From Blastocladiella emersonii ATCC 22665 (lineage: Eukaryota; Fungi; Blastocladiomycota): DNA of 64,000 nt. The stretch's first letter is position 1. Each line of letters begins with the position of its first letter. Under the pieces are notes generated by a model. It was not told where the DNA came from, did no database searches, and saw nothing but the letters and a program-made list of their open reading frames with translations. Of this stretch, positions 6,172-56,699 are shown in pieces. Where the stretch lies: assembly GCA_025594325.1 (NCBI GenBank), contig JANHCV010000003.1, forward strand, positions 1,426,001-1,490,000, written 5' to 3'. A program made the position numbers and the translations under genes.

Positions 6172-6879
6172 TTAAACGAGCTGGAACTGCGACTGCGACT
6201 GGAACTGCGAGGCGTCGATGCCGTGGCCGTGCGCGCCCGAGAGGTCCTGGAACTGCGACTGCGACTGGGCCTGCACCGCGTCGCCGTGGCCAAAGTTGCC
6301 CTGGAACTGCGACTGCGACTGGGCCTGCAGCGCGTCGCCGTGGCCGTGGCCGGCGTTCCACTGCGACTGAGCCTGCGACTGCTGCTGGAACGCGTCGCCG
6401 CCGTGGCCGTGACCGTGACCAACGTCCCACTGCGACTGCTGCTGCGCCTGCGACTGGAAGCCGCCATCGCCCGCCTGGAACTGCGACTGCGACTGCTGCT
6501 GGAAGGCGTCGTCAACCGTGTGGTGGCCGCTGCCCCAGTTGCTCTGCGCCTGCGACTGGAACTGCGACTGCGCGCCATGGTCACCGCCAAACTGGTTCTG
6601 CGCCTGCGACTGGAACTGCGACTGCGCGCCATGGTCACCGCCAAACTGGTTCTGCGCCTGCGACTGGAACTGCGACTGCGCGCCATGGTCACCGCCAAAC
6701 TGGGTCTGGGCCTGTGACTGGAACTGCGACTGGGCGCCGTGGTCGCCAAACTGTTGCTGTGCCTGCCACTGCGACTGCGACTGCGCGCCGCCGTTGCCGG
6801 CGGAGAACTGGGCCTGCGACTGGGCCTGGGTCTGCACGGCCGGGATCGAGATCGGGGCGAAAGCGGCGGTGGCACTCAT
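6172..6879 (-). CDS. 235-aa Q/S/G/H-rich low-complexity repeat protein (QSQFQSQAQ motifs), unknown function
   Basis: ATG at 6879 in MSATAAFAP. Repeats GDHGAQSQFQSQAQNQFG and GHGHGDA.QAQSQSQFQ. TATA-like box about 95 bp upstream. Host-like codon bias. Confidence 0.75.
   Translation of the reverse strand: MSATAAFAPISIPAVQTQAQSQAQFSAGNGGAQSQSQWQAQQQFGDHGAQSQFQSQAQTQFGGDHGAQSQFQSQAQNQFGGDHGAQSQFQSQAQNQFGGDHGAQSQFQSQAQSNWGSGHHTVDDAFQQQSQSQFQAGDGGFQSQAQQQSQWDVGHGHGHGGDAFQQQSQAQSQWNAGHGHGDALQAQSQSQFQGNFGHGDAVQAQSQSQFQDLSGAHGHGIDASQFQSQSQFQLV
6543..6753. repeat. 54-bp coding tandem repeat (3 near-identical copies plus 1 degenerate)
   Basis: Unit tctgcgcctgcgactggaactgcgactgcgcgccatggtcaccgccaaactggt starts at 6543, 6597 and 6651, with a diverged copy at 6705. 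Confidence 0.95.
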
Positions 6880-46990: not shown

Positions 46991-48175
46991 ATGGGTCGCA
47001 CTCAGCTCCACTCTGCCCAGCGCCAGGCCGTGCACCAGCACCAGGCCCAGACCGCCAACACCAAGTCCGCCATCGCGAACAACAACAACGCGCCCGCTGC
47101 GAAGCAGCAGCAGCAGCAGCAGGCTCGTGTCCAGTCGCCGCAGCTCAAGCAGGCTGCCCCCGCCGCCGCCGCTCAGCAGCAGAAGCAGGCCCCGCAGCAA
47201 GCCCGCGCGCAGTCGGCTCAGCCCAAGCAGGCCGCCGTTCAGCAGCAGCAGGCTCGCGCTCAGTCGCCCCAGCTCAAGCAGCAGCAGCAGGCCTCGGTCG
47301 CCGCCGCTCCCCAGAAGCAGCAGCTCCAGGCCCGTACCCAGTCGGCGGCCGCCGCAGCGCAGGTCTACCGCGCCACGCCCGTGCGCGAGCATCCCGACGA
47401 CGCGTTCCTCTCGGGCGCGTGGATGTTCGACGAGGCCCGCGTCCCGCAGTGGATGGCGCCGCAGCTGCCCAAGGCCCAGCAGCAGCAGGCCCGCGCCGTT
47501 CAGCCCACCGCCGCCGCTCGCGCTCAGTCGCCTCAGCAGCAGCAGCAGCATCACCTCAAGCAGGCGGCCCCCGCTGCCGCCACGCCCGTGAAGCAGCAGG
47601 CGGCCGCTCGCGCGCAGCCTCAGAAGGTCCAGCTCCCGCGCAACGCCGCTGCTGTGATCCCCGTCGGCGCGGTCCGCGCCAAGAACGCGTCGGCCGACGA
47701 CGCCTTCTTCTCGGGCTCGTGGCTCTTTGACTCGGCCGCCGCGCCGCAGTGGCTCCAGTCGCAGCTGCCCGCGCCCAAGGCCCAGCAGGCGCAGGCTCAG
47801 GCTCAGCCTCAGCCTCAGCAGCAGCAGCTCAAGCAGCAGGCCCCCGCTCCTCGCGCGCAGTCGGCCCAGATCAAGCAGGCTGCCGCCCCGACTCAGCAGC
47901 AGCAGGCGCGCGCTCAGTCGCCTCAGCTGAAGCAGGCAGCGCCCGCTCAGCAGGCTGCCGCCGCTCCCCGCGCGCAGTCGGCCCAGCTCAAGCAGGCCGC
48001 TCCTCAGCAGCAGCAGACCCGCGCTCAGTCGCCGCAGCTCAAGCAGGCGCAGCAGCTTCAGAAGCCCCAGCAGCAGCAGATCCAGGTCCAGGCCCAGGCC
48101 CAGAAGCAGCAGGCCCAGAAGCAGCAGGACCAGCGCCGCCCGCAGTCGCCGACCCGCGGCAACAAGCGCGCGTAA
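46991..48175 (+). CDS. 394-aa Q/A/P-rich repeat protein (AQSPQLKQ repeats, two aromatic motifs)
   Basis: ATG 46991 after a TATA box. Many RAQSPQLKQ/RAQSAQLKQ units, plus DDAFLSGAWMFDEARVPQWM and DDAFFSGSWLFDSAAAPQWL. Confidence 0.75.
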   Translation: MGRTQLHSAQRQAVHQHQAQTANTKSAIANNNNAPAAKQQQQQQARVQSPQLKQAAPAAAAQQQKQAPQQARAQSAQPKQAAVQQQQARAQSPQLKQQQQASVAAAPQKQQLQARTQSAAAAAQVYRATPVREHPDDAFLSGAWMFDEARVPQWMAPQLPKAQQQQARAVQPTAAARAQSPQQQQQHHLKQAAPAAATPVKQQAAARAQPQKVQLPRNAAAVIPVGAVRAKNASADDAFFSGSWLFDSAAAPQWLQSQLPAPKAQQAQAQAQPQPQQQQLKQQAPAPRAQSAQIKQAAAPTQQQQARAQSPQLKQAAPAQQAAAAPRAQSAQLKQAAPQQQQTRAQSPQLKQAQQLQKPQQQQIQVQAQAQKQQAQKQQDQRRPQSPTRGNKRA

Positions 48176-48356
48176 CGGCCTCGACGCGTAACGATACCCT
48201 TGACGTGCATCGCGAGGAGCGAAATCGGCTCATGCGATGTTCGACCGATCAATAAAAGACTTCTCCTATCCTTTCGTGTATGAAAGCATTAGTGGACGCG
48301 TCGCGATATCATGTGGCGACCAAGTGACGCGGCGGAGTCAGCTTCATTTGCGCCGG

Positions 48357-48382
48357 GAAGCGACCTAGTCTCGGTGCCAGAC
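48357..48382 (+). repeat. Left TSD (GAAGCGACC) and left TIR of the AcademH element
   Basis: gaagcgacc|tagtctcggtgccagac. Confidence 0.95.
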
Positions 48383-49030
48383 CGTGCGGATCCAGCTGGC
48401 CAGAGCGGTCGCGTGGGGGTCACGTTTCCGGAGTCACATGACCGCGCCCTGCACGGCGCGTCTCTCGTACGGTCTGGTTGCAGTTTGCTCGGCCCAGAAG
48501 CGATCTGCGCTCTAAACCTCCTGCTCCCGCACCCCTTACCCGATCGGCTTTATATGCATATCAATCGACGCGTCTCTGCAAGGGATACACGCTCGTATCA
48601 ATCACAAACCTTGATTCCGCGCCGCTGAGGAGTTAGGCTTGATCGAAGGCCGCGGCCCTGTGGTAGCCGCTCGAGCGCGGGCCCTCGCGGCGCCGCCCTC
48701 ACTCCCCGCGACATGAACTTCACAACTAAGGCAATACGTGAGTACAACAAGCTTCTGGCTTTATTCTGACACCCATGGATGTGAAAAATATGTGGTCGGA
48801 GCGATGATTGAGCGGGGAGGAGCCGCGCGGCCTCGCGCCCCACTCTCAAGGCCCGATCCTTGGGCGGGATAATGAGAATCCGAGCTCCTCCTGATTCATG
48901 AGCATTGAATGCGTCGACCTCGGTCAAGGGGACTGGTGTTGGACGAAGTGATGCGGGCCAAGTCGCGCGGCGCCCACCGCGTTCGCTCTCTCCAATATAG
49001 CTCCACGAATGCACCTCCATGTGAGCTGCT

Positions 49031-52000
49031 ATGCAACCTAACCTATCGCAACCGACATTTATGACCAAGAAATCTCGCAGGTCGACGGCGGCCGCCCCTT
49101 TGGCAAGCTCGTCTGACTCGGCACCGTCCGCCGGGAGTGGAACGAGCGGTGGTCGTCCCCCTGACCCTGTACAGTCGATGGGCGACCGGACGCGACTCGA
49201 CTCGGAGCCTCGTCGATGGTTCTTGCGTCGCATGGTCCAACCGATTCCGCGGGACCCGCCCTGGAAACCTCTTGATCGTCAGTTGCTCGCGAGGGCCGCC
49301 TTGGCGCGTCTCACGCCAGATGACCTTCGCCAGGGCTACATCGACTTGTGTGCGGATCTGGATCCGACTGGTGCGAATACTAAGCTTGCCGTCCTTCCAA
49401 ATGCGACCAAGGAGTCGGTTACTCGCGAGTGGGGTGAGCTGCTTGAGTTGATCGATACATCCATTGACCGCGATCCAGTCGCCGAGGCCATCCCGCTTCT
49501 TCATGCCGAGCTCGAACGATTCAACAAAGCGTCCGCCAACGACCTGAAGCTTGGCACAAAGCTCGACTTTGAGGCGCTCAACGTGGGCGATATCGCCCAG
49601 CGCTGCGCGAACATCTGCCCTCAGCTTTATAGAATACTCAAAGCTATCAGCACCCCTCCGCGTAAACAATCAGCGGCTCGCCCTTTGACGCCAGCTTCTG
49701 ACGAATCGGCTAGTTCCTTCGATTCGGACGAGTCCGACTCGCCGCCCGCGCAATCCAAGCGCGCTGGGACATCCACAATCGTAACGCCCGCCATGCTTTC
49801 GTACATGTTCATTATCACGACGCTCAACTTCCTCCTGCATGGCCACTCCTCTGCGCTGCACCTGGCGCTCGGAATGATGCTCGATTACCTCAGTGGGGCT
49901 TCACGCGCAGTCATTAAAATCCTCAACAAGCTGAAGGTTACAGCGTCCGACTGGTCTAACCATCGGAGCCTCAACCTTGCGGCCAAGTTGAAGCGTACAG
50001 GTGCAGGGTGCGAGAGGAAGGTTGAGCACGATGCACGGAAGGCTGAGGAGATGACGGAGACGGTGATGGACACGGCGAAGGAGGTAGACGCAGAAGGGAG
50101 GAAAGGGTGTATAACGACGGCTAATAGTAGCAGCGATCTAGAACAAAACCAGAGGGAGCGGAGACGCTCGCTTGAGGTGAGCGTGCGACCCCGCGGCGAG
50201 GCAGTCCGCCGGCGGTGAATGGAAGTGTGGCGCCGCCGGCGCGTGCCACTCGCGTGATTGCCCGACGCGTCTCTCGCGGTCGGGCCAGCGTGCGCATGTG
50301 TACTTGAACTGGCCACGAGCGCCAGGGGCGCGGTGAAGAAGCTCCTCGCTGATCCGAAAGCGCTTGTCGTGATTGCCATGGACAATGTCAATGTTTACCA
50401 GTCTCCATCTGAATCGACCTCGATTCACGGTTCGGTCATGCACAATTGGACTCTTGTCCTGTCCTTTGAGGTCCCAAAGCCGTGCGACTTCGCGTTCACG
50501 CCCGAGCAGCTCTCGCTTCGAAATGCCCTGCTTCGCGCACACGATACGCCGGCTATGCGAACGCCTGGCTCCCCTACTTACTCTCTCAAGGCCATTCTGG
50601 AGCCTCCGGCAGACCGCTCGGCCCGCCTTCAGCGCGCTCGGCGCGAAATTGCGCATTACATTTCGAGCAATGATGGGCCAGCGGCCGACCTTGGCCACGC
50701 TCGGGTTCTTGGCCACGCTGCCTTTGCGCTTCCCGCCAATACAGCTCCCGCAGTCACACTTCCGGTTGTGATCCGCGTGGTCGAGATTCTTAACCTGAAC
50801 GAAGGCGAGCGGTCTGGCATGATCAACGTGTTGGACGAGGTGCTGCGACTCGTTGGTCGCCACCCGACGCAGCCCATCTTTGGTGATGACGGAACCTTTC
50901 TCATGCAATGGGCCGCAAAGGCCGCTCGACAGTACTGCGGCTTTGGAGGGGATTTGAGCACCATTGTGCCCATCACCTCGGACTGGCACACGATGTTCAA
51001 CTTCGTTGCTGCGATTGTGAACCGCTTCTGGGGTGAGCCCACCGACCAGCTGTCCATCTCGTGGTACAAACAGCTTACTCAGCGCAAGGAACTCAAACGT
51101 GCCAAGATTACGTATCACGCCGGCATGCGGATCATCGACGAGCTGGTACGCCTCCCTGAGCTGCTGAAACTAGGAACAGGTTGGATATTGACATGTGCTT
51201 GTACGTCCCCGAAAGCTTGAGTGTCATTTGCGTGCGCTCTTCAAGCTTGAGCTTGCCGAGCTCAAGCGTGCTCGAGGTCTGACTGACTCGGACCCGTACA
51301 AGCTCTCTGTCAACGATGCTGCTGTTGTGATCGACAAGATCATGACCAACTGGGTGTACTATAAAACACCGTACGTCTTGCTCGCGCATTTCAGCTTTCG
51401 TGGAACCCACTAATCAACGTCCCGTCTTTCATTTAGCGCCGATCTCCATTTCTACAGCAATAATCCCCTCGCGTCGAAGCGTGGTTCCGGCTCCTCGAGC
51501 AAGGAAACCATTCCCATGCCCGCGAGTGCCCAGCAACACATTTTTCTTGGCGAGTTCTTGCAGGCCGCGCTCCTCCTCCGCGATTTCAGCAAAACGGTGC
51601 GCGCTGGCGACGGTCCCGCCCTGGTTCGGCTCCAGCGACCGCTTCTCGCCGCGTTTCTTGGCTCGGACCACAAGGTTTACCAGCGCGCCATCATGAGCGA
51701 GCTCCGTGGTCAGGCTGGCGCCTATTCCGAGTACGACCGCCTGCTCTCCACTTACCTCCGCTCTGTGCATTCCGCCAAATCGGAATCGGGCACCTGTCGC
51801 CCGATTGATCACCACGTCGAGGAACACGTCCGTGTTGTCAAGATCGGGGTCAAGAGCGCAGGCGCGAACGTTACCTTTGACAGCGCGGCCAATTTGGTCC
51901 ACGCCATGCCCAAGCTTAAGGCCATCGAGTCGACGTTCAACAACGTGTGCGCGATTTCTCCACCGTCCGCTTACCATAAGCGTGCTCGCGACAAGGCCCG

Positions 52001-52310
52001 TGCTCCGGCTGTCGACCTGATCTATTCGCGCCTTATCGACCCGAAACCCATGCACGATGGTACCGTCAAGGCGTTCAGCATCATTGGGCGGCAGCGAATG
52101 GGAGACGCCAGCCTCATGGTAGATCTCTGGGACTACTCGGACGTGACGAAGAAGCATCCCATGCCGGGGTCGAGTCTTGCATCTGTTGCTGCGGGGCAAG
52201 GCGAGCAGAGTAGCACCAACTCGGACGAGCTCCTCGCTTTCCCTCACCCCGAGGAGGAAATCATTGAAATCGAGTTGTCTGGGCTCGACAAGGATAGCGA
52301 CGAATTTTAA
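49031..52310 (+). CDS. Academ-type (DUF6589-like) DDE transposase; introns ~50008-50325 (uncertain), 51146-51215, 51371-51436
   Basis: Motifs in order: LGMMLDYLSGASRAVIKILNKL, VIAMDNVN, IFGDDGT, SDWHTMFN and PIDHHVEEHVRVVK, matching the DN.N / GD / xxH / D..xE pattern I recall for Academ transposases. The two 3' introns have canonical GTACG...AG ends and restore the frame. Confidence 0.78.
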
Positions 52311-52515
52311 GAGCAATACATATGAATTTTCCATCGTTCCGCGGACGCGCGCGCCTCGGCGAGTGAAGTGAGAAGTGTCTCGCAGCAGTCACGTGTTTGA
52401 TCGACGCGTCTCGCACGCGCACGAACCGAGACACTCGGTCGCAAAAATTAACTCAAACTCGACGAATCAAGAATAAATGATGATAGAAGCCTTTTATTTG
52501 GGCTAGATGCATGGC

Positions 52516-55261
52516 TCACGCGCCAGGTGGCGCGGGATGGTGGTGCTGGGTTGCTTGGTCCGCGGCAGCGCCGTGCGTAAACGGCGGCGCTTGAGCTTGA
52601 GTATTGCCGATCGGAGTTTGCTGAGGAGTAGCAACGTTGATCCCGTGCACGACGGACAAGTACCGAGCCATTGCGGGCGAAAAGTCGATGGCGGGGAAGC
52701 GAGGAGTTGGCGGGGGAGACGTCGGATAGCCAGAACTAGCCGAAATATACGGAGCTGGAGCTGAGGCAGGATGGGGAGCTGCGAATTGTTGAGGATACGG
52801 ATGGGCGGGAAGCGTGCCTGCATGAGAAGGAATCCAGGTCGCAGAGGGTGCAGCTTGAGGAAGCGGGATGTTCGTGGGAGCAAAGTGGGGCGCGTATCCT
52901 GGAGCTGGAGCGGGGTTTGAGACTGCGGGCGACAGTGACGGCGGCGTGGAGAGTGGAACTGGCACCGATAGTTGCGGCTCAGGAGCAATCGGATCGTCAA
53001 CATCCATGCGGTCGACGACCTGGGTCGCTTTAGGCTGGGCTTTGCCTCCCCGCTTGCCCTTGCCCGTTCGCGTGGTCGGCTGCGTTGTTGCAACCTCGGT
53101 TGGCTGTGATGTAGCAGCCTTTTTGGTGGCCTTCTTAGGCACGACCTTGGGCAACGCCCCGGTGTAAGCCAGCCGAATGCGCTCGAGAAGGCGTCCCACA
53201 TGGTCAGGTACGAAAAGCGAAGAATCTGGAGTCAAATAGTCGCGGGTCAGGATATCTGCATCAAACGCGGGATTCACGACGGCCAGGACATGCGCATTGG
53301 CGGTTATCCGTTCCAGTTCCTTGTCCGACAAAAAGTCGGCGACATTAAACATGTTGAGACCGTTGCAGTCGGACAACTCAATGCCAAGCTCGTTTGTCAG
53401 GTCAACGATGCTCGAAAAGAAATGGCGGAGCGATTCCAACCCCTTGAGCTTTCGCCCAGCCACTCGAGAACGAGGAGCCTTTGGTTTTGGTGCAGGGGCG
53501 GATGATGGAGGTGGAGGAAGCGAATCGAACGAGCGATGCAGAGCATCTTCGCTTGCAACATGGAAGTTGTAAATCGGAGATATGCGCGGATGGCCATGGG
53601 TCGAGCAGCAAATGTTCGGGTCAAGATGATCGCTGGACGGAACTCCATTGATCATTTCAAGCAAGACGGAACGTGCGCAAACAGGGGAGCTCTCGCTGGA
53701 GTTAGAAGGTTGCTCAAGATCCAGAGGCAGAGCGGGAGCAGAAACCGCAAGATCAGAGGCAACTGCATCCGCGGGCTCAGAGACAAGATGCGCGGGCTCA
53801 GACTCGAGGTTTGGACGCTTCTTTGGTGGCGGGGCGTCCTCGTTTGGAGCGCCGATGCCATGGCCCTGGAAGAAGGCGTCAACAACAAAGTCCATCGGTT
53901 TGTTGCTGGTTGAAGTAGAGGAGCTGACCGCTGGCGGGGCTGCACTAGCCGCGCTGCGAGCAGCATAGTACATGATGAACTCGGCCGGGTTTCCATCGCG
54001 GCCTGCGCGGCCCATGATCTGCATCGCCTCCTCCCCGGATGGCGTATTACCGATCGAAACGACACAGCGGACGTTGGGAACATGGACACCGGTGCCAAAC
54101 GCGTGCGTTGAGAAAAGAATTCGCGGTTGAACATGCTCAACGTTGCTTGTCATGTCGTTGTACACCGATTCGTGGTGCGCGGAATTGAGATCGCCGTGGT
54201 AATGCGCGAAAAGCGGGGCCGCGGTCGGGTTCAGCGCACACATGTAGCCGTAGAAGGCAACGACAAGTAACGGTTCGTACAAGTACACGAGAATGCGCGG
54301 TTTGCTGGCCGCGTTCGCAGGGTTGAGAGACATGACGTAGTCGCGCAGCCACTCGTAATGCTACGCGCGACTCAGTGGTCAGTGAATGAGCGATGCGTTG
54401 CGATGTCGCGCAGACGCATACGTAAGAGCCCGGATCCCGAATGGTCGTCGCATGCTTGGAGCGGACGAGACGAATGTAAATCTCGGGGCGGTCAAGCGGA
54501 CCGCGAACAAGCACGTAATCGTCACTGCCAAACTAAAGCTGAGTTCGAGTGATGTTGTGCTCCAGCTTTTTCCCAAGAGTGGCCGACATGATGAGTACAG
54601 GCGCATTGGGGAACAGCGAGCGGGCCTTGAACAGTTGCTTGCACTCGGGCCGGAACTGCGAGGTAGAATCGCCCCTAGTGAGCGAGAAGAACGTTCAGCA
54701 TCGTGTTCATCGTGCCGATGCGTTCCGAACGACGAGAACGCAGGCTCAGACTGCGTACCAGATCGCGAAGAGGTGCGCCTCATCAAGGACGATGAGGCCC
54801 ACGCGAGTGGCGGGTCGCTCCGAGATCCAAGCGGCGTGGAAACTGTTCACGTAGTACTCGGGCGTCATGAAGGCAATCCGGACCTCACCATTAAACAGTC
54901 GAGCCAGGGACGTCGCACGGTCGCTCGGTGCAACGTCCGAGTGAAACGATGCAGCCTCGATGCCCTTCGCGCGCGTCTGACTCAGCTGATCTCGAAGAAG
55001 CGAGCGGTAAGGGGACAAGACCACGACGATCTCTCCATCAAGCAGCTGCGCCATCGCGTGGAAGATGAGCGACTTGCCGAACCCGGTCCGCGCAGTGAGG
55101 ACCACGCTACGGCCCTCGAGCAGGTGCGAGAGAACCTGCTCCTGCTCGAGTCGAGGTTCGTCGATACCCAGCGAGAGGACGGTCTCGACTATCTGGTCAT
55201 GGTGCGGGAGCAGGCCCTCCGGTCGGGCCTGCGCCGCGGATTCCATTGCATTAGCTGACAT
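52516..55261 (-). pseudogene. RecQ-like SF2 helicase of the element, with an in-frame TAG at 54533-54535; introns 54675-54758 and 54361-54421
   Basis: ARTGFGKS (I), VLSPYRSLLRDQ (Ia), TPE, LDEAH (II), spliced WGDSTSQFRPE, IMSAT (III), STHAFGTGVH (V), QIMGRAGRDG (VI), Cys cluster CARSVLL...ICCSTH and a Pro-rich tail. The start codon could alternatively be ~55466. Confidence 0.88.
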
Positions 55262-55687
55262 GGCAGTGCGATAGAGTGCGTTTCGACTTTCATGATGCAG
55301 TAGGAGAGCGGGAGGAGACGGGCGAAGTGGGCGGGGCAGTCGGGCGAGCATCGACGCAGCGGGCCCGACCCTAGCCGAATTATCTCTCGCGACTCCCGCG
55401 AGTCCCGCGCGGGACTTGACCCCTTGCAACTGACATGGATCGATAGGTTGCATCGAGTACTCCATTTTATTAGTGTACGCCAAGGGCGATAGGTCAGGCG
55501 GTTGGGGAGCTAGAGCGCGATCAGAGCGCGCGGGGGGGGGGGGGGTTTCGGGCGCGCGAAAGCACAGGCGAGGCGTGGCGCCACGCAAACTGCTACCAGA
55601 CTCCAGCACCGTCGATCCGAACGAGCGCCCGCGGGTCACGCGGCGGCGATTGACTTGACAACGCCTCGAAGGTCACGTTGCCCTGGA

Positions 55688-55713
55688 GTCTGGCACCGAG
55701 ACTAGAAGCGACC
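55688..55713 (-). repeat. Right TIR and right TSD of the AcademH element
   Basis: gtctggcaccgagacta|gaagcgacc. Confidence 0.95.
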
Positions 55714-56699
55714 GTCGTCGTTGGCTTCCTTGGCCGTTCCTCTCACGGCTCACCACCACTCGCCATGAATCTGATGAACGAGTCGATGCAACGGACATGG
55801 AATCACGCGATGACGCTGACTTGCTGCATTATGGCCCTCACGCTTCCAAGTGCTTCTCAGTGGGTCGGCCGAACCGCACTGCACTTCACCCGCTTGAACG
55901 AAGCTAGCGGGCGGATCCTCGACCCTCTCTCATGGTCGACCCGAATAGAATCGACCCGACGGCGATGACTTGCCGTTGATACATCAGACAGACGTGCGTC
56001 TCGAGCGGCCGACTTGGTGCTTGGTGCGGCTGCCGCTCCAGAACGATTTCCAAATCCATCTTGCCCGATGTCCTTCGTGAGTCTCGAAGTTATTCCCAAA
56101 CTACTTGACTCGGACTGCAGCAAAGATTTCGACACAGTCGATGAGAACCTAATGGCCTGTTTCGATCAGCGCGCAGTCCGTGCTGATGTGCTTGTTGCAT
56201 CAGCCGGTGTCGCCGCTCTTGATGCAAAGTTGTCGATGATCCCCGAGGTATGGGCGGGTTGGCTGCCAGCGCGGAATCGATGTTTAAACGTACCTGGCTA
56301 CGCCATGGCCGCGACCAGGCCGAAATCTGGGCTCAAGGACACGCATTACACGTGTTCGTTCATTTTAGGAGAGGGCAACCAAGCAGCGGGCGAGTCGACT
56401 GCACAAATGGAGATTTTACATATTGGCTCATGCATGCCGAGAGCGCAGTGCAATGAAGGACGCGGTTGCACTGGGCGTTGGCGTCCTGTGAGAGCTGCGC
56501 TTCATGCACAACATAATGCAGCAAGTCAAGTTCATCGCGTGATTACATGGTCGTTGCATCGACTCGTTCATCAGATTCATGGCGAGTGGTGGTGAGCCGT
56601 GAGAGGAACGGCCAAGGAAGCCAACGACGACGGTCGCTTCCCGGTGCGAACGAAGCTGTCTCCGCCGCGTCACTACTCCTCGGCTAGCACGCTACTCCG

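What the first reader, a model, noticed from the sequence alone, without database searches (positions are those of the whole stretch)
48377..55693. Each transposon end carries its own ~100-bp-spaced inverted repeat with end-specific, co-varying sequence
Seen: at the left end, CCAGACCGTGCG (48377-48388) pairs with CGTACGGTCTGG (48466-48477), 11/12 matches. At the right end, CCAGACTCCAG (55596-55606) pairs perfectly with CTGGAGTCTGG (55683-55693). The CCAGAC core is shared with the TIR, but the extension differs between ends and is complementary only within each end. A further 17-bp subterminal inverted match (48472-48488 versus 55585-55601, 1 mismatch) lies ~105 bp from each terminus. Inference: selection for an intra-end fold-back or paired binding sites, which would suit a mechanism involving helicase-generated single-stranded ends rather than plain cut-and-paste.
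Basis: partly seen in the sequence, partly recalled or inferred. Interest (0 to 1): 0.8.

Follow-up and report, generated by a model that had tools for sequence, protein, structure and literature searches.

The report
Covarying stem-loops at AcademH transposon ends
Each end of this helicase-carrying jumping gene holds a short inverted repeat whose sequence changes from family to family, and even from end to end, while staying self-complementary in about a hundred related ends, which implies that the ends fold back on themselves at some stage and gives a testable reason why the element carries a DNA helicase.

Summary
It proves to be a conserved feature of a whole group of transposons.

**The element.** It spans 48366-55704, with a perfect 17-bp TIR and a 9-bp target duplication. 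It carries a DUF6589 transposase and a convergent RecQ-like helicase, which is the AcademH layout.

**The stem.** In each end the last 6 nt of the TIR (CCAGAC) plus 5-6 further nt pair with a complement about 77 nt further in.

**Relatives.**
- One end in Allomyces macrogynus has the same architecture with a third extension (CCTT/AAGG).
- A DNA-pattern scan that fixed only the TIR and the core found 83 metagenome loci. They include complete elements with the same gene layout or 9-bp duplications.

**Covariation.** Across 40 non-redundant ends the bases next to the core covary:
- 13 different perfectly complementary 4-nt extensions, needing at least 12 double substitutions.
- Permutation test 0/20000; shuffle control 0/500.
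- RNAalifold finds the same stem without guidance.

Folding is far better than shuffled controls.

**Reading.** Best explanation: a structure-selected stem-loop in single-stranded or cruciform DNA that acts in cis in transposition. A role for the helicase is inferred, not shown. The founding AcademH paper could not be read, so novelty is provisional. The scan also noted a fold-back Academ end elsewhere in this genome.

The parts
48357..48365 (.). Left copy of the 9-bp target-site duplication, GAAGCGACC
   Evidence: Identical 9-mer at 55705-55713. An uninterrupted paralogue of the target lies at 56512-56674 (I1/I2). Contigs of public runs continue from 48365 into an uninterrupted copy (table 7).
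48366..48382 (+). Left terminal inverted repeat, TAGTCTCGGTGCCAGAC
   Evidence: Perfect 17-nt inverted match with 55688-55704; the only two hits in the window at up to 3 mismatches. TAGTCTCG-NNN-CCAGAC is shared with L001 and 83 metagenome loci.
48377..48388 (+). Left end, 5' arm of the stem (core CCAGAC plus extension CGTGCG)
   Evidence: Unchanged in a second, diverged copy of this end in the same sample.
48389..48465 (+). Left end, 77-nt loop. It holds CGGAGT at 48429-48434, a motif present in 9 of the 40 representative ends
   Evidence: The second genomic copy differs here by 7 substitutions and 4-5 indels, all within 48395-48429.
48466..48477 (+). Left end, 3' arm of the stem (CGTACG plus core GTCTGG)
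   Evidence: 11/12 complementary to 48377-48388. It forms the closing stem of the minimum-energy DNA fold on both strands.
48472..48491 (+). Left inner conserved block, GTCTGGTTGCAGTTTGCTCG, directly 3' of the stem
   Evidence: 16/17 inverted match to 55585-55601. The block is conserved across families as GTCTGGTG(A/C)(C/A)(T/G)TT(C/T)GG.
49031..52310 (+). Transposase gene region, read inward from the left end (ORF pieces 49031-50218, 50258-51220, 51516-52310)
   Evidence: Pfam DUF6589: 7.8e-11 and 1.7e-5. 33% identity over 146 aa to Allomyces macrogynus KNE70424.1.
52516..55639 (-). RecQ-like SF2 helicase gene region, read inward from the right end
   Evidence: Pfam DEAD 1e-18 and Helicase_C 1e-9. 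Nearest solved structures are RecQ, WRN, RECQ4/5/1 and BLM.
55582..55601 (-). Right inner conserved block (GTCTGGTAGCAGTTTGCGTG on the - strand)
55596..55606 (-). Right end, 3' arm of the stem (read from the right terminus)
   Evidence: 11/11 complementary to 55683-55693.
55607..55682 (-). Right end, 76-nt loop
   Evidence: The stem-loop 55596-55693 folds with z = -3.9; the terminal 130 nt (55575-55704) with z = -2.6 and -2.8.
55683..55693 (-). Right end, 5' arm of the stem (core CCAGAC plus extension TCCAG on the - strand)
55688..55704 (-). Right terminal inverted repeat
55705..55713 (.). Right copy of the 9-bp target-site duplication

Best explanation
Each end of this AcademH-type DNA transposon is a composite cis-acting site. 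It consists of an 11-nt outer TIR segment, a stem, a loop of 29-77 nt, and a conserved block of about 14-20 nt directly 3' of the stem. The stem is made of the inner TIR hexamer CCAGAC plus 3-12 variable nt, paired with a complement further in. The loop often carries CGGAGT motifs. The stem is kept by selection for base pairing, not for sequence. So at some stage of the element's life cycle the end is single-stranded, or extruded as a cruciform, and folds back. That would place the outer TIR segment next to the conserved inner block at the foot of the hairpin. Shown: the stem exists, it is conserved across deeply diverged families, and it covaries. Inferred: that the folded form is DNA rather than RNA; that the transposase recognises it; and that the element's own RecQ-like helicase opens the duplex to let it form, or removes it afterwards.
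For: - **Third end.** The one Allomyces macrogynus end (transposase 33% identical over 146 aa) has the same layout with a different complementary extension, CCTT/AAGG.
- **Unbiased scan.** A scan that fixed only the TIR and the GTCTGGT core found 83 metagenome loci. L048 has DUF6589 plus a DEAD/Helicase_C helicase in the same convergent layout. Five complete elements, the window's among them, have 9-bp duplications.
- **Pairs beyond the core.** In 40 representatives, the perfect run beyond the core averages 2.75 against 0.76 when arms are cross-paired (0/20000 permutations).
- **Pair counts.** 79.2% of cells are paired against 70.1% shuffled; covariation is 0.236 against 0.107 (0/500); slid registers give 0.04-0.10.
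- **Independent changes.** There are 13 perfect 4-nt extension types, needing at least 12 double substitutions.
- **De novo prediction.** RNAalifold finds the same stem unprompted.
- **Folding.** With the core held fixed, mean z is -3.3 (top strand) and -3.85 (bottom strand), and 29 and 34 of 40 fall below -2.
- **Unselected ends.** Eleven of 12 TIR-bearing ends that the pattern did not select have a partner at 8-11/12 (10 of them at 9 or more), against 6-8 for chance TAGTCTC hits. One has a compensated core change, TCAGAC/GTCTGA.
- **Ends of one element.** The window's two ends have unrelated extensions. The two ends of L068 differ by an indel present in both arms.
- **Gene-less derivatives.** A 528-bp element with a perfect 9-bp duplication keeps both stems.
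- **Second genomic copy.** It keeps the 5' arm and what is covered of the 3' arm, while the loop has diverged.
Against: - No experiment or read evidence shows single-stranded or hairpin DNA.
- Loops of 29-77 nt make spontaneous cruciform extrusion unlikely.
- The window's left end does not fold better than shuffles (z -0.6 to -1.85).
- Six of 40 representatives show no extension beyond the core.
- One lineage (L014/L049/L064) has lost the 3' arm by a 34-nt deletion.
- The metagenome set was selected to contain the 6-bp core, so it says nothing about how many such elements lack the feature.
- The representatives are related to one another, so shuffle counts overstate independence.
- Nine-bp duplications are what ordinary double-strand DDE integration gives.
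- No strand preference could be established: 10 A.C-type against 4 G.T-type mismatches, and a longer closing stem on the bottom strand in 9 representatives against 4 for the top. Both differences are weak.
Confidence: 0.55

Rival explanations
1. Paired duplex binding sites. CCAGAC and its inverted copy are two half-sites on double-stranded DNA, bound by a transposase dimer that loops the spacer. This would resemble the inner and outer sites of other transposon ends. Complementarity would then reflect shared protein specificity, as it does for TIRs, and not base pairing.
For: The hexamer core and the block 3' of it are conserved in sequence across families, as binding sites are. The TIR is itself a near-dyad, GTCTCG-NNN-CCAGAC. 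Recurrent loop motifs such as CGGAGT look like further binding sites. Covariation between families alone cannot separate this from pairing, because binding sites co-evolve with their protein.
Against: Within one element a single transposase must serve both ends. Yet the window's ends carry unrelated extensions (CGTGCG against TCCAG), each matched only within its own end, and L068 shows a within-end matched indel. Thirteen extension types sit beside an invariant core, which is unlike a recognition sequence. Arms often continue for 12-20 nt with bulges, and the folds are much more stable than shuffles.
Confidence: 0.15
2. Neutral by-product. The arms do pair physically, but only as a side effect. 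Examples would be hairpin-templated correction during replication or gap repair, or fold-back priming as in parvovirus termini. Such a process would keep re-copying one arm from the other without any selected function.
For: It explains within-end complementarity with end-specific sequence equally well. Mismatches are largely transitions, with no clear strand bias. Deletion of the 3' arm is tolerated in at least one lineage.
Against: Templated correction of quasi-palindromes is known mainly for short loops, whereas these loops are 29-77 nt. That statement rests on general knowledge and was not tested. The position of the stem relative to the TIR and the inner block is fixed across families whose transposase pieces BLASTP could not align, which points to constraint. 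Gene-less derivatives keep it.
Confidence: 0.15
3. RNA structure. Both genes are read inward from their own ends, so the stem-loops could be 5' leader hairpins that control translation or stability. Alternatively they could be hairpins in read-through transcripts that are processed into small RNAs.
For: The genes are convergent, so each end lies upstream of a gene in the sense orientation. The window's single mismatch is G.U-compatible on the sense strand.
Against: The 5' arm starts at nt 12 of the element, so a transcript containing it would have to start within the first 11 nt or outside the element. Gene-less derivatives keep the stems. Transition mismatches lean, if anything, toward the antisense strand (10 against 4). 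No RNA run holds the element.
Confidence: 0.07
4. Chance. The two inverted repeats in the window are coincidences in a GC-rich sequence.
For: Each alone is only modestly unusual: 2.4% and 1.1% of shuffles reach it. The left end's folding energy is ordinary.
Against: The register is the same in both ends, and the same architecture appears in Allomyces macrogynus and in about 100 metagenome ends with significant covariation.
Confidence: 0.01

Closest known systems
AcademH lineage of the Academ superfamily of eukaryotic DNA transposons (Kojima 2020, Mob DNA 11:15, cited in PMC10045372 and PMC10799480)
   Same: A transposase gene plus a separate SF2 helicase gene (DEAD and Helicase_C), TIRs, and a 9-bp target duplication. 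PMC10045372 states that AcademH makes 9 or 10-bp duplications and AcademX 3 or 4 bp. PMC10799480 reports it from Basidiomycota, Ascomycota and Mucoromycota.
   Different: No paper I could search describes a conserved, covarying subterminal stem-loop or the shared TAGTCTCG-NNN-CCAGAC terminus. The founding paper is not held, so I cannot rule out that it shows these termini. The host here is a relative of Allomyces (Blastocladiomycota), a phylum not listed in the passage read.
IS200/IS605 and IS91/Helitron-type single-strand transposons with subterminal hairpins (from general knowledge)
   Same: Subterminal stem-loops whose structure, more than their sequence, is what is kept. Helitrons also carry a helicase.
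   Different: Those use HUH/Y1 nucleases, have no TIRs and make no target duplication. The Helitron helicase is Pif1-like (SF1). This element has TIRs, 9-bp duplications, a DUF6589 transposase and a RecQ-like SF2 helicase.
Inner repeats of cut-and-paste transposon ends: the P-element 11-bp internal inverted repeats, the piggyBac internal repeats, and the Sleeping Beauty IR/DR (from general knowledge)
   Same: A second conserved block about 100 nt inside each end, inverted between the two ends, like the block at 48472-48491 and 55582-55601.
   Different: Those are duplex protein-binding sites conserved in sequence. They are not known to be complementary to the adjacent TIR with family-specific and end-specific covarying extensions.
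Parvovirus/AAV terminal hairpins and Foldback-type elements (from general knowledge)
   Same: Self-complementary termini kept through base pairing.
   Different: Those hairpins include the very terminus or span long arms. Here the outer 11 nt are outside the stem and the stem is only 9-20 bp around a large loop.

Membership tests
AcademH (Academ superfamily) | Separate SF2 helicase gene (DEAD plus Helicase_C) beside the transposase gene | tested here: met
   Window: DEAD 1e-18 and Helicase_C 1e-9 on the - strand, RecQ-like. The same convergent layout is seen in L001 and L048.
AcademH (Academ superfamily) | Target-site duplication of 9 or 10 bp (AcademX: 3 or 4 bp), as stated in PMC10045372 | tested here: met
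   9 bp in the window (9/9), L066 (9/9), L068 (9/9), L048 (8/9) and L054 (8/9).
AcademH (Academ superfamily) | Academ-type DDE transposase | tested here: inconclusive
   The transposase pieces match Pfam DUF6589. No library on hand labels a profile as Academ, and the founding paper is not held. The link from DUF6589 to Academ is therefore inferred from the helicase and the duplication length.
AcademH (Academ superfamily) | Terminal inverted repeats | tested here: met
   Perfect 17-bp TIR.
HUH single-strand transposons (IS200/IS605, IS91, Helitron) | HUH/Y1 or Rep nuclease, with no TIRs and no target duplication | tested here: not met
   No such domain in any ORF scanned. TIRs and 9-bp duplications are present. 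The helicase is RecQ-like, not Pif1-like.
Structured cis element kept by base pairing | Compensatory changes on both sides of predicted pairs, above shuffled and slid controls | tested here: met
   Caveats: the 6-bp core was fixed by the search pattern, and the sequences are related to one another.
Structured cis element kept by base pairing | The structure forms in vivo and is needed for function | not testable with these tools
   This needs mobilisation assays with disrupting and compensatory mutants, or chemical probing.
Duplex inner/outer transposase-binding repeats (IR/DR, P-element type) | Repeat sequence conserved between the two ends of one element | tested here: not met
   The core and the inner block are conserved between ends, but the extensions next to the core are not (window and L068). 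Only the extension part fails this test.

The most novel reading that the evidence does not exclude
AcademH elements transpose through structured ends. Their own RecQ-like helicase would open each end so that a covarying stem-loop forms, and a DDE-type transposase would recognise that fold. This would be a eukaryotic TIR transposon whose end recognition is structure-specific, and it would explain why this lineage replaced a nuclease with a helicase.
Probability: 0.3. Interest if true: 0.85.

Novelty: new variant of a known kind. Interest (0 to 1): 0.68.

Why it matters
Academ is one of the least studied superfamilies of eukaryotic DNA transposons, and no role is known for the helicase of AcademH. 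A stem kept by compensatory change in each end, across families whose transposase pieces BLASTP could not align, is concrete evidence that the ends work in a folded form. It turns the question of what the helicase is for into a defined experiment: disrupting and compensatory stem mutants, with and without the helicase. It also gives a compact signature (TAGTCTCG-NNN-CCAGAC, stem, conserved inner block, 9-bp duplication). With that signature both full-length and gene-less members can be found in fungal genomes and soil metagenomes, where protein searches failed.

Tried and rejected
**Protein routes to relatives mostly failed.**
- Word-index searches with the transposase ORF, with P0001 and with the helicase ORF found nothing beyond P0001 itself.
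- The exhaustive representative search gave one hit, P0001.
- Its 90% cluster has a single member.
- A back-translated pattern scan of metagenomes gave nothing.
- An exact look-up of the 605-aa ORF found nothing on record.

**Literature.** The founding AcademH paper could not be fetched by DOI or by PMC id.

**L001.** Its right end could not be found, so that copy looks truncated.

**More ends in the window.** The covariance model found no further ends in the window or in L001.

**Strand of the fold.** Transition mismatches are 10 A.C-type against 4 G.T-type on the top strand. The closing stem is longer on the bottom strand in 9 representatives against 4 for the top. This is too weak to use.

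**Second TIR copy.** I considered that the inner block might be an inverted second copy of the TIR. Beyond GTCTGG the sequences do not match, so I rejected this.

**Chance.** Rejected.

**Expected number of pattern hits.** My rough estimate of about 7 chance matches rests on a guessed database size, so I do not rely on it. The homology of the hits rests on the conserved inner block, the duplications and the coding content.
Full report
**Observation**

- Left end: 48377-48388 (CCAGACCGTGCG) pairs with 48466-48477 (CGTACGGTCTGG) at 11 of 12 positions, with 77 nt between the arms. The one mismatch, 48386 against 48468, is G.T on the + strand.
- Right end: 55596-55606 pairs perfectly (11/11) with 55683-55693, with 76 nt between the arms.
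- The subterminal block 48472-48488 matches 55585-55601 in inverted orientation at 16 of 17 positions, 106 and 103 nt from the termini.

CCAGAC is the inner hexamer of a perfect 17-bp TIR, TAGTCTCGGTGCCAGAC.

In dinucleotide shuffles of the terminal 140 nt, an equally good inverted repeat appeared in 24/1000 cases (left) and 11/1000 (right). That does not count the identical register at both ends. CCAGAC is under-represented in the window, 23 occurrences against about 40 in shuffles.

The two ends align only in the TIR and in the block beginning with GTCTGG. Everything between them, including the extensions next to the core, differs.

**The element**

It spans 48366-55704 (7339 bp) and is flanked by a perfect 9-bp duplication, GAAGCGACC.

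The insertion lies in one arm of another inverted repeat. The other arm, 56512-56674, preserves the uninterrupted target (I1 and I2). Contigs of public runs of the same sample continue from 48365 straight into an uninterrupted copy.

The + strand carries ORF pieces matching Pfam DUF6589. The - strand carries DEAD and Helicase_C pieces. The nearest solved relatives of the helicase are RecQ, WRN, RECQ4/5/1 and BLM.

A transposase with a separate SF2 helicase and a 9-bp duplication fits AcademH. PMC10045372 states that AcademH makes duplications of 9 or 10 bp and AcademX of 3 or 4 bp.

I could not confirm that DUF6589 is the Academ transposase, because the founding paper is not held.

The window lies on NCBI GCA_025594325.1, contig JANHCV010000003.1. 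The tool did not give the organism's name.

**Relatives**

Protein searches were nearly blank. The exhaustive search gave one protein, KNE70424.1 of Allomyces macrogynus ATCC 38327, 33% identical over 146 aa.

Its locus, L001, has the same convergent layout of DUF6589 gene and DEAD gene. Its left end reads TAGTCTCGAAC-CCAGAC-CCTT, then 64 nt, then AAGG-GTCTGG-TTCCAAAC. This is a third end with the same architecture and a third self-complementary extension.

I then scanned metagenome contigs for TAGTCTCG-NNN-CCAGAC, followed 55-85 nt later by GTCTGGT. The bases next to the core were left free. This returned 83 loci.

These are the same kind of element.
- L048 holds a 5.7-kb copy with DUF6589 ORFs on one strand and DEAD/Helicase_C ORFs on the other.
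- Complete elements in L048, L054, L066 and L068 have 9-bp duplications, matching at 8/9, 8/9, 9/9 and 9/9.
- L068 is a 528-bp gene-less derivative.

The pieces of the L048 transposase show no BLASTP similarity to the window's or to P0001, although all three match DUF6589. The compared pieces overlap only partly on the Pfam profile, so this is weak evidence of distance. A covariance model built on the ends then found about 100 full-length ends in these loci.

**Covariation**

The 91 ends fall into 40 clusters at about 85% identity.

- *Run of pairs beyond the core.* In the representatives, the perfect run averages 2.75 nt against 0.76 when 5' arms are cross-paired with 3' arms of other ends. 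None of 20000 permutations reached the observed value.
- *Pair counts on alignment A3, 14-pair stem.* 79.2% of cells are paired against 70.1% in shuffles (0/500). The covariation score is 0.236 against 0.107 (0/500), and 0.04-0.10 when the 3' partners are slid by 1-3 columns.
- *Pair types.* The first extension pair is C-G in 14 ends, G-C in 13 and U-A in 4. The second is U-A in 16, C-G in 13 and G-C in 3.
- *Allowing for relatedness.* I counted types, not sequences. There are 13 different perfectly complementary 4-nt extensions, and linking them needs at least 12 double substitutions. For 5 nt there are 13 types and at least 16.
- *De novo prediction.* RNAalifold, given only the alignment, predicts the same stem.
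- *Ends the pattern did not select.* Eleven of 12 TIR-bearing ends that failed the pattern have a partner at 8-11 of 12 positions (10 of them at 9 or more). Chance occurrences of TAGTCTC reach only 6-8. One of these ends has a compensated change in the core itself, TCAGAC with GTCTGA.

**Folding and other conserved parts**

With the 6-bp core held fixed and the interior shuffled, DNA folding energies give a mean z of -3.3 (top strand) and -3.85 (bottom strand). The score is below -2 in 29 and 34 of the 40 representatives. Many arms run on for 12-20 nt with bulges.

The window's right end folds well: z is -3.9 for the stem-loop itself and -2.6 to -2.8 for the terminal 130 nt. Its left end does not (-0.6 to -1.85).

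Directly 3' of the stem lies a block conserved across families, GTCTGGTG(A/C)(C/A)(T/G)TT(C/T)GG. CGGAGT occurs in the loops of 9 of the 40 representatives and GAAAAA in 16. The window's left loop has CGGAGT at 48429-48434.

I could not establish a strand preference. Transition mismatches are 10 A.C-type against 4 G.T-type on the top strand.

**Ends of one element compared**

This comparison separates base pairing from shared protein specificity, because one transposase must serve both ends.
- Window: the extensions are unrelated (CGTGCG against TCCAG), yet each is matched within its own end.
- L068: the two ends differ by an indel that is present in both arms of each end.
- L048 and L066: both ends carry the same or nearly the same extension, so they are uninformative.

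**Exceptions**

- Six of 40 representatives have no extension beyond the core. Three of them (L003, L055, L057) have a second TIR-like start at that position instead.
- One lineage (L014/L049/L064) has lost the 3' arm through a 34-nt deletion.

**Other copies in the host**

Contigs of runs X1-X3, all from one sample, show a second, diverged copy of the left end. All 7 substitutions and 4-5 indels fall within 48395-48429, in the loop. Positions 48366-48394 (TIR and 5' arm) and 48430-48472 are unchanged. So the G.T mismatch is not private to this copy.

**Mechanism**

Shown: a stem at a fixed position in each end, maintained by compensatory change and kept in gene-less derivatives.

Inferred: the arms pair physically in single-stranded or cruciform DNA. 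The fold would bring the outer 11 nt of the TIR next to the conserved inner block. The transposase would read this junction. The RecQ-like helicase would create or remove the fold. I give the general claim of functional DNA pairing 0.55, and the specific helicase-dependent recognition model about 0.3.

Rivals:
- duplex paired binding sites, 0.15, weakened by the comparison of ends within one element;
- neutral arm-to-arm correction, 0.15;
- RNA leader hairpins, 0.07. The 5' arm starts at nt 12, and gene-less copies keep the stem;
- chance, 0.01.

**Comparison and novelty**

By helicase, duplication length and TIRs the element is an AcademH-type transposon.

Subterminal hairpins are known for HUH single-strand transposons. 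Inner repeats are known for P, piggyBac and Sleeping Beauty (general knowledge). I found no description of a covarying stem that overlaps the TIR of a DDE-type eukaryotic transposon. Because the founding AcademH paper could not be read, I file this as a new variant of a known kind.

The scan's own notes list a fold-back Academ end on another piece of this genome (s1-292798). I could not fetch it. It is a lead that agrees with this report, not independent support.

Noticed in passing
window 49981-50310: The stretch that splits the transposase reading frame is a 330-bp insertion/deletion polymorphism. Contigs of all three public runs join 49980 directly to 50311, with GGCCA on both sides. Without it, 49031-51220 reads as one 619-aa frame with no internal stop. 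The 330 bp has higher contig depth than the rest of the element, so it may be repeated elsewhere.
   Followed up: partly
window 48323-48365 plus 55705-55833, and 56512-56674: The transposon sits in one arm of another inverted repeat (129 nt at 95% and 43 nt at 91%). Other uninterrupted copies of that repeat exist in the sample (loose ends at 48365).
   Followed up: partly
window 48366-48382 and all related TIRs: The TIR is itself a near-dyad: GTCTCG, three free bases, then CCAGAC, with 5 of 6 positions complementary. So CCAGAC could pair either with the outer half of the TIR or with the inner GTCTGG.
   Followed up: no
L001 8415-8440 (Allomyces macrogynus GG745366.1): The left terminus abuts GAGAC, giving a perfect 12-bp palindrome GAGACTAGTCTC at the boundary. 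The right end of this copy is missing, and the helicase gene is a 164-aa fragment.
   Followed up: partly
L011 1-40 and 832-871: The 40 nt on either side of a 791-bp element are perfect inverted repeats of each other. Either the element lies inside a larger palindrome or the contig is a fold-back assembly artefact.
   Followed up: partly
L014 10122-10179, L049 2977-3034, L064 2295-2352: An end variant with a 34-nt deletion, flanked by GT on both sides, has lost part of the loop and the 3' arm extension. The deletion happens to recreate GTCTGG.
   Followed up: partly
L003 ~1775-1794, L055 1984 and 2041, L057 ~6480-6505: A second TIR-like start (TAGTCTGGTT..., or TAGTCTCG again 57 nt further in) stands in direct orientation inside the end. 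This suggests tandem or nested ends.
   Followed up: no
window 48000-48134: Upstream of the element, many contigs show joints that go back or skip 35-69 nt, and depth is high. This indicates a variable tandem repeat in the Q/A-rich gene there.
   Followed up: no
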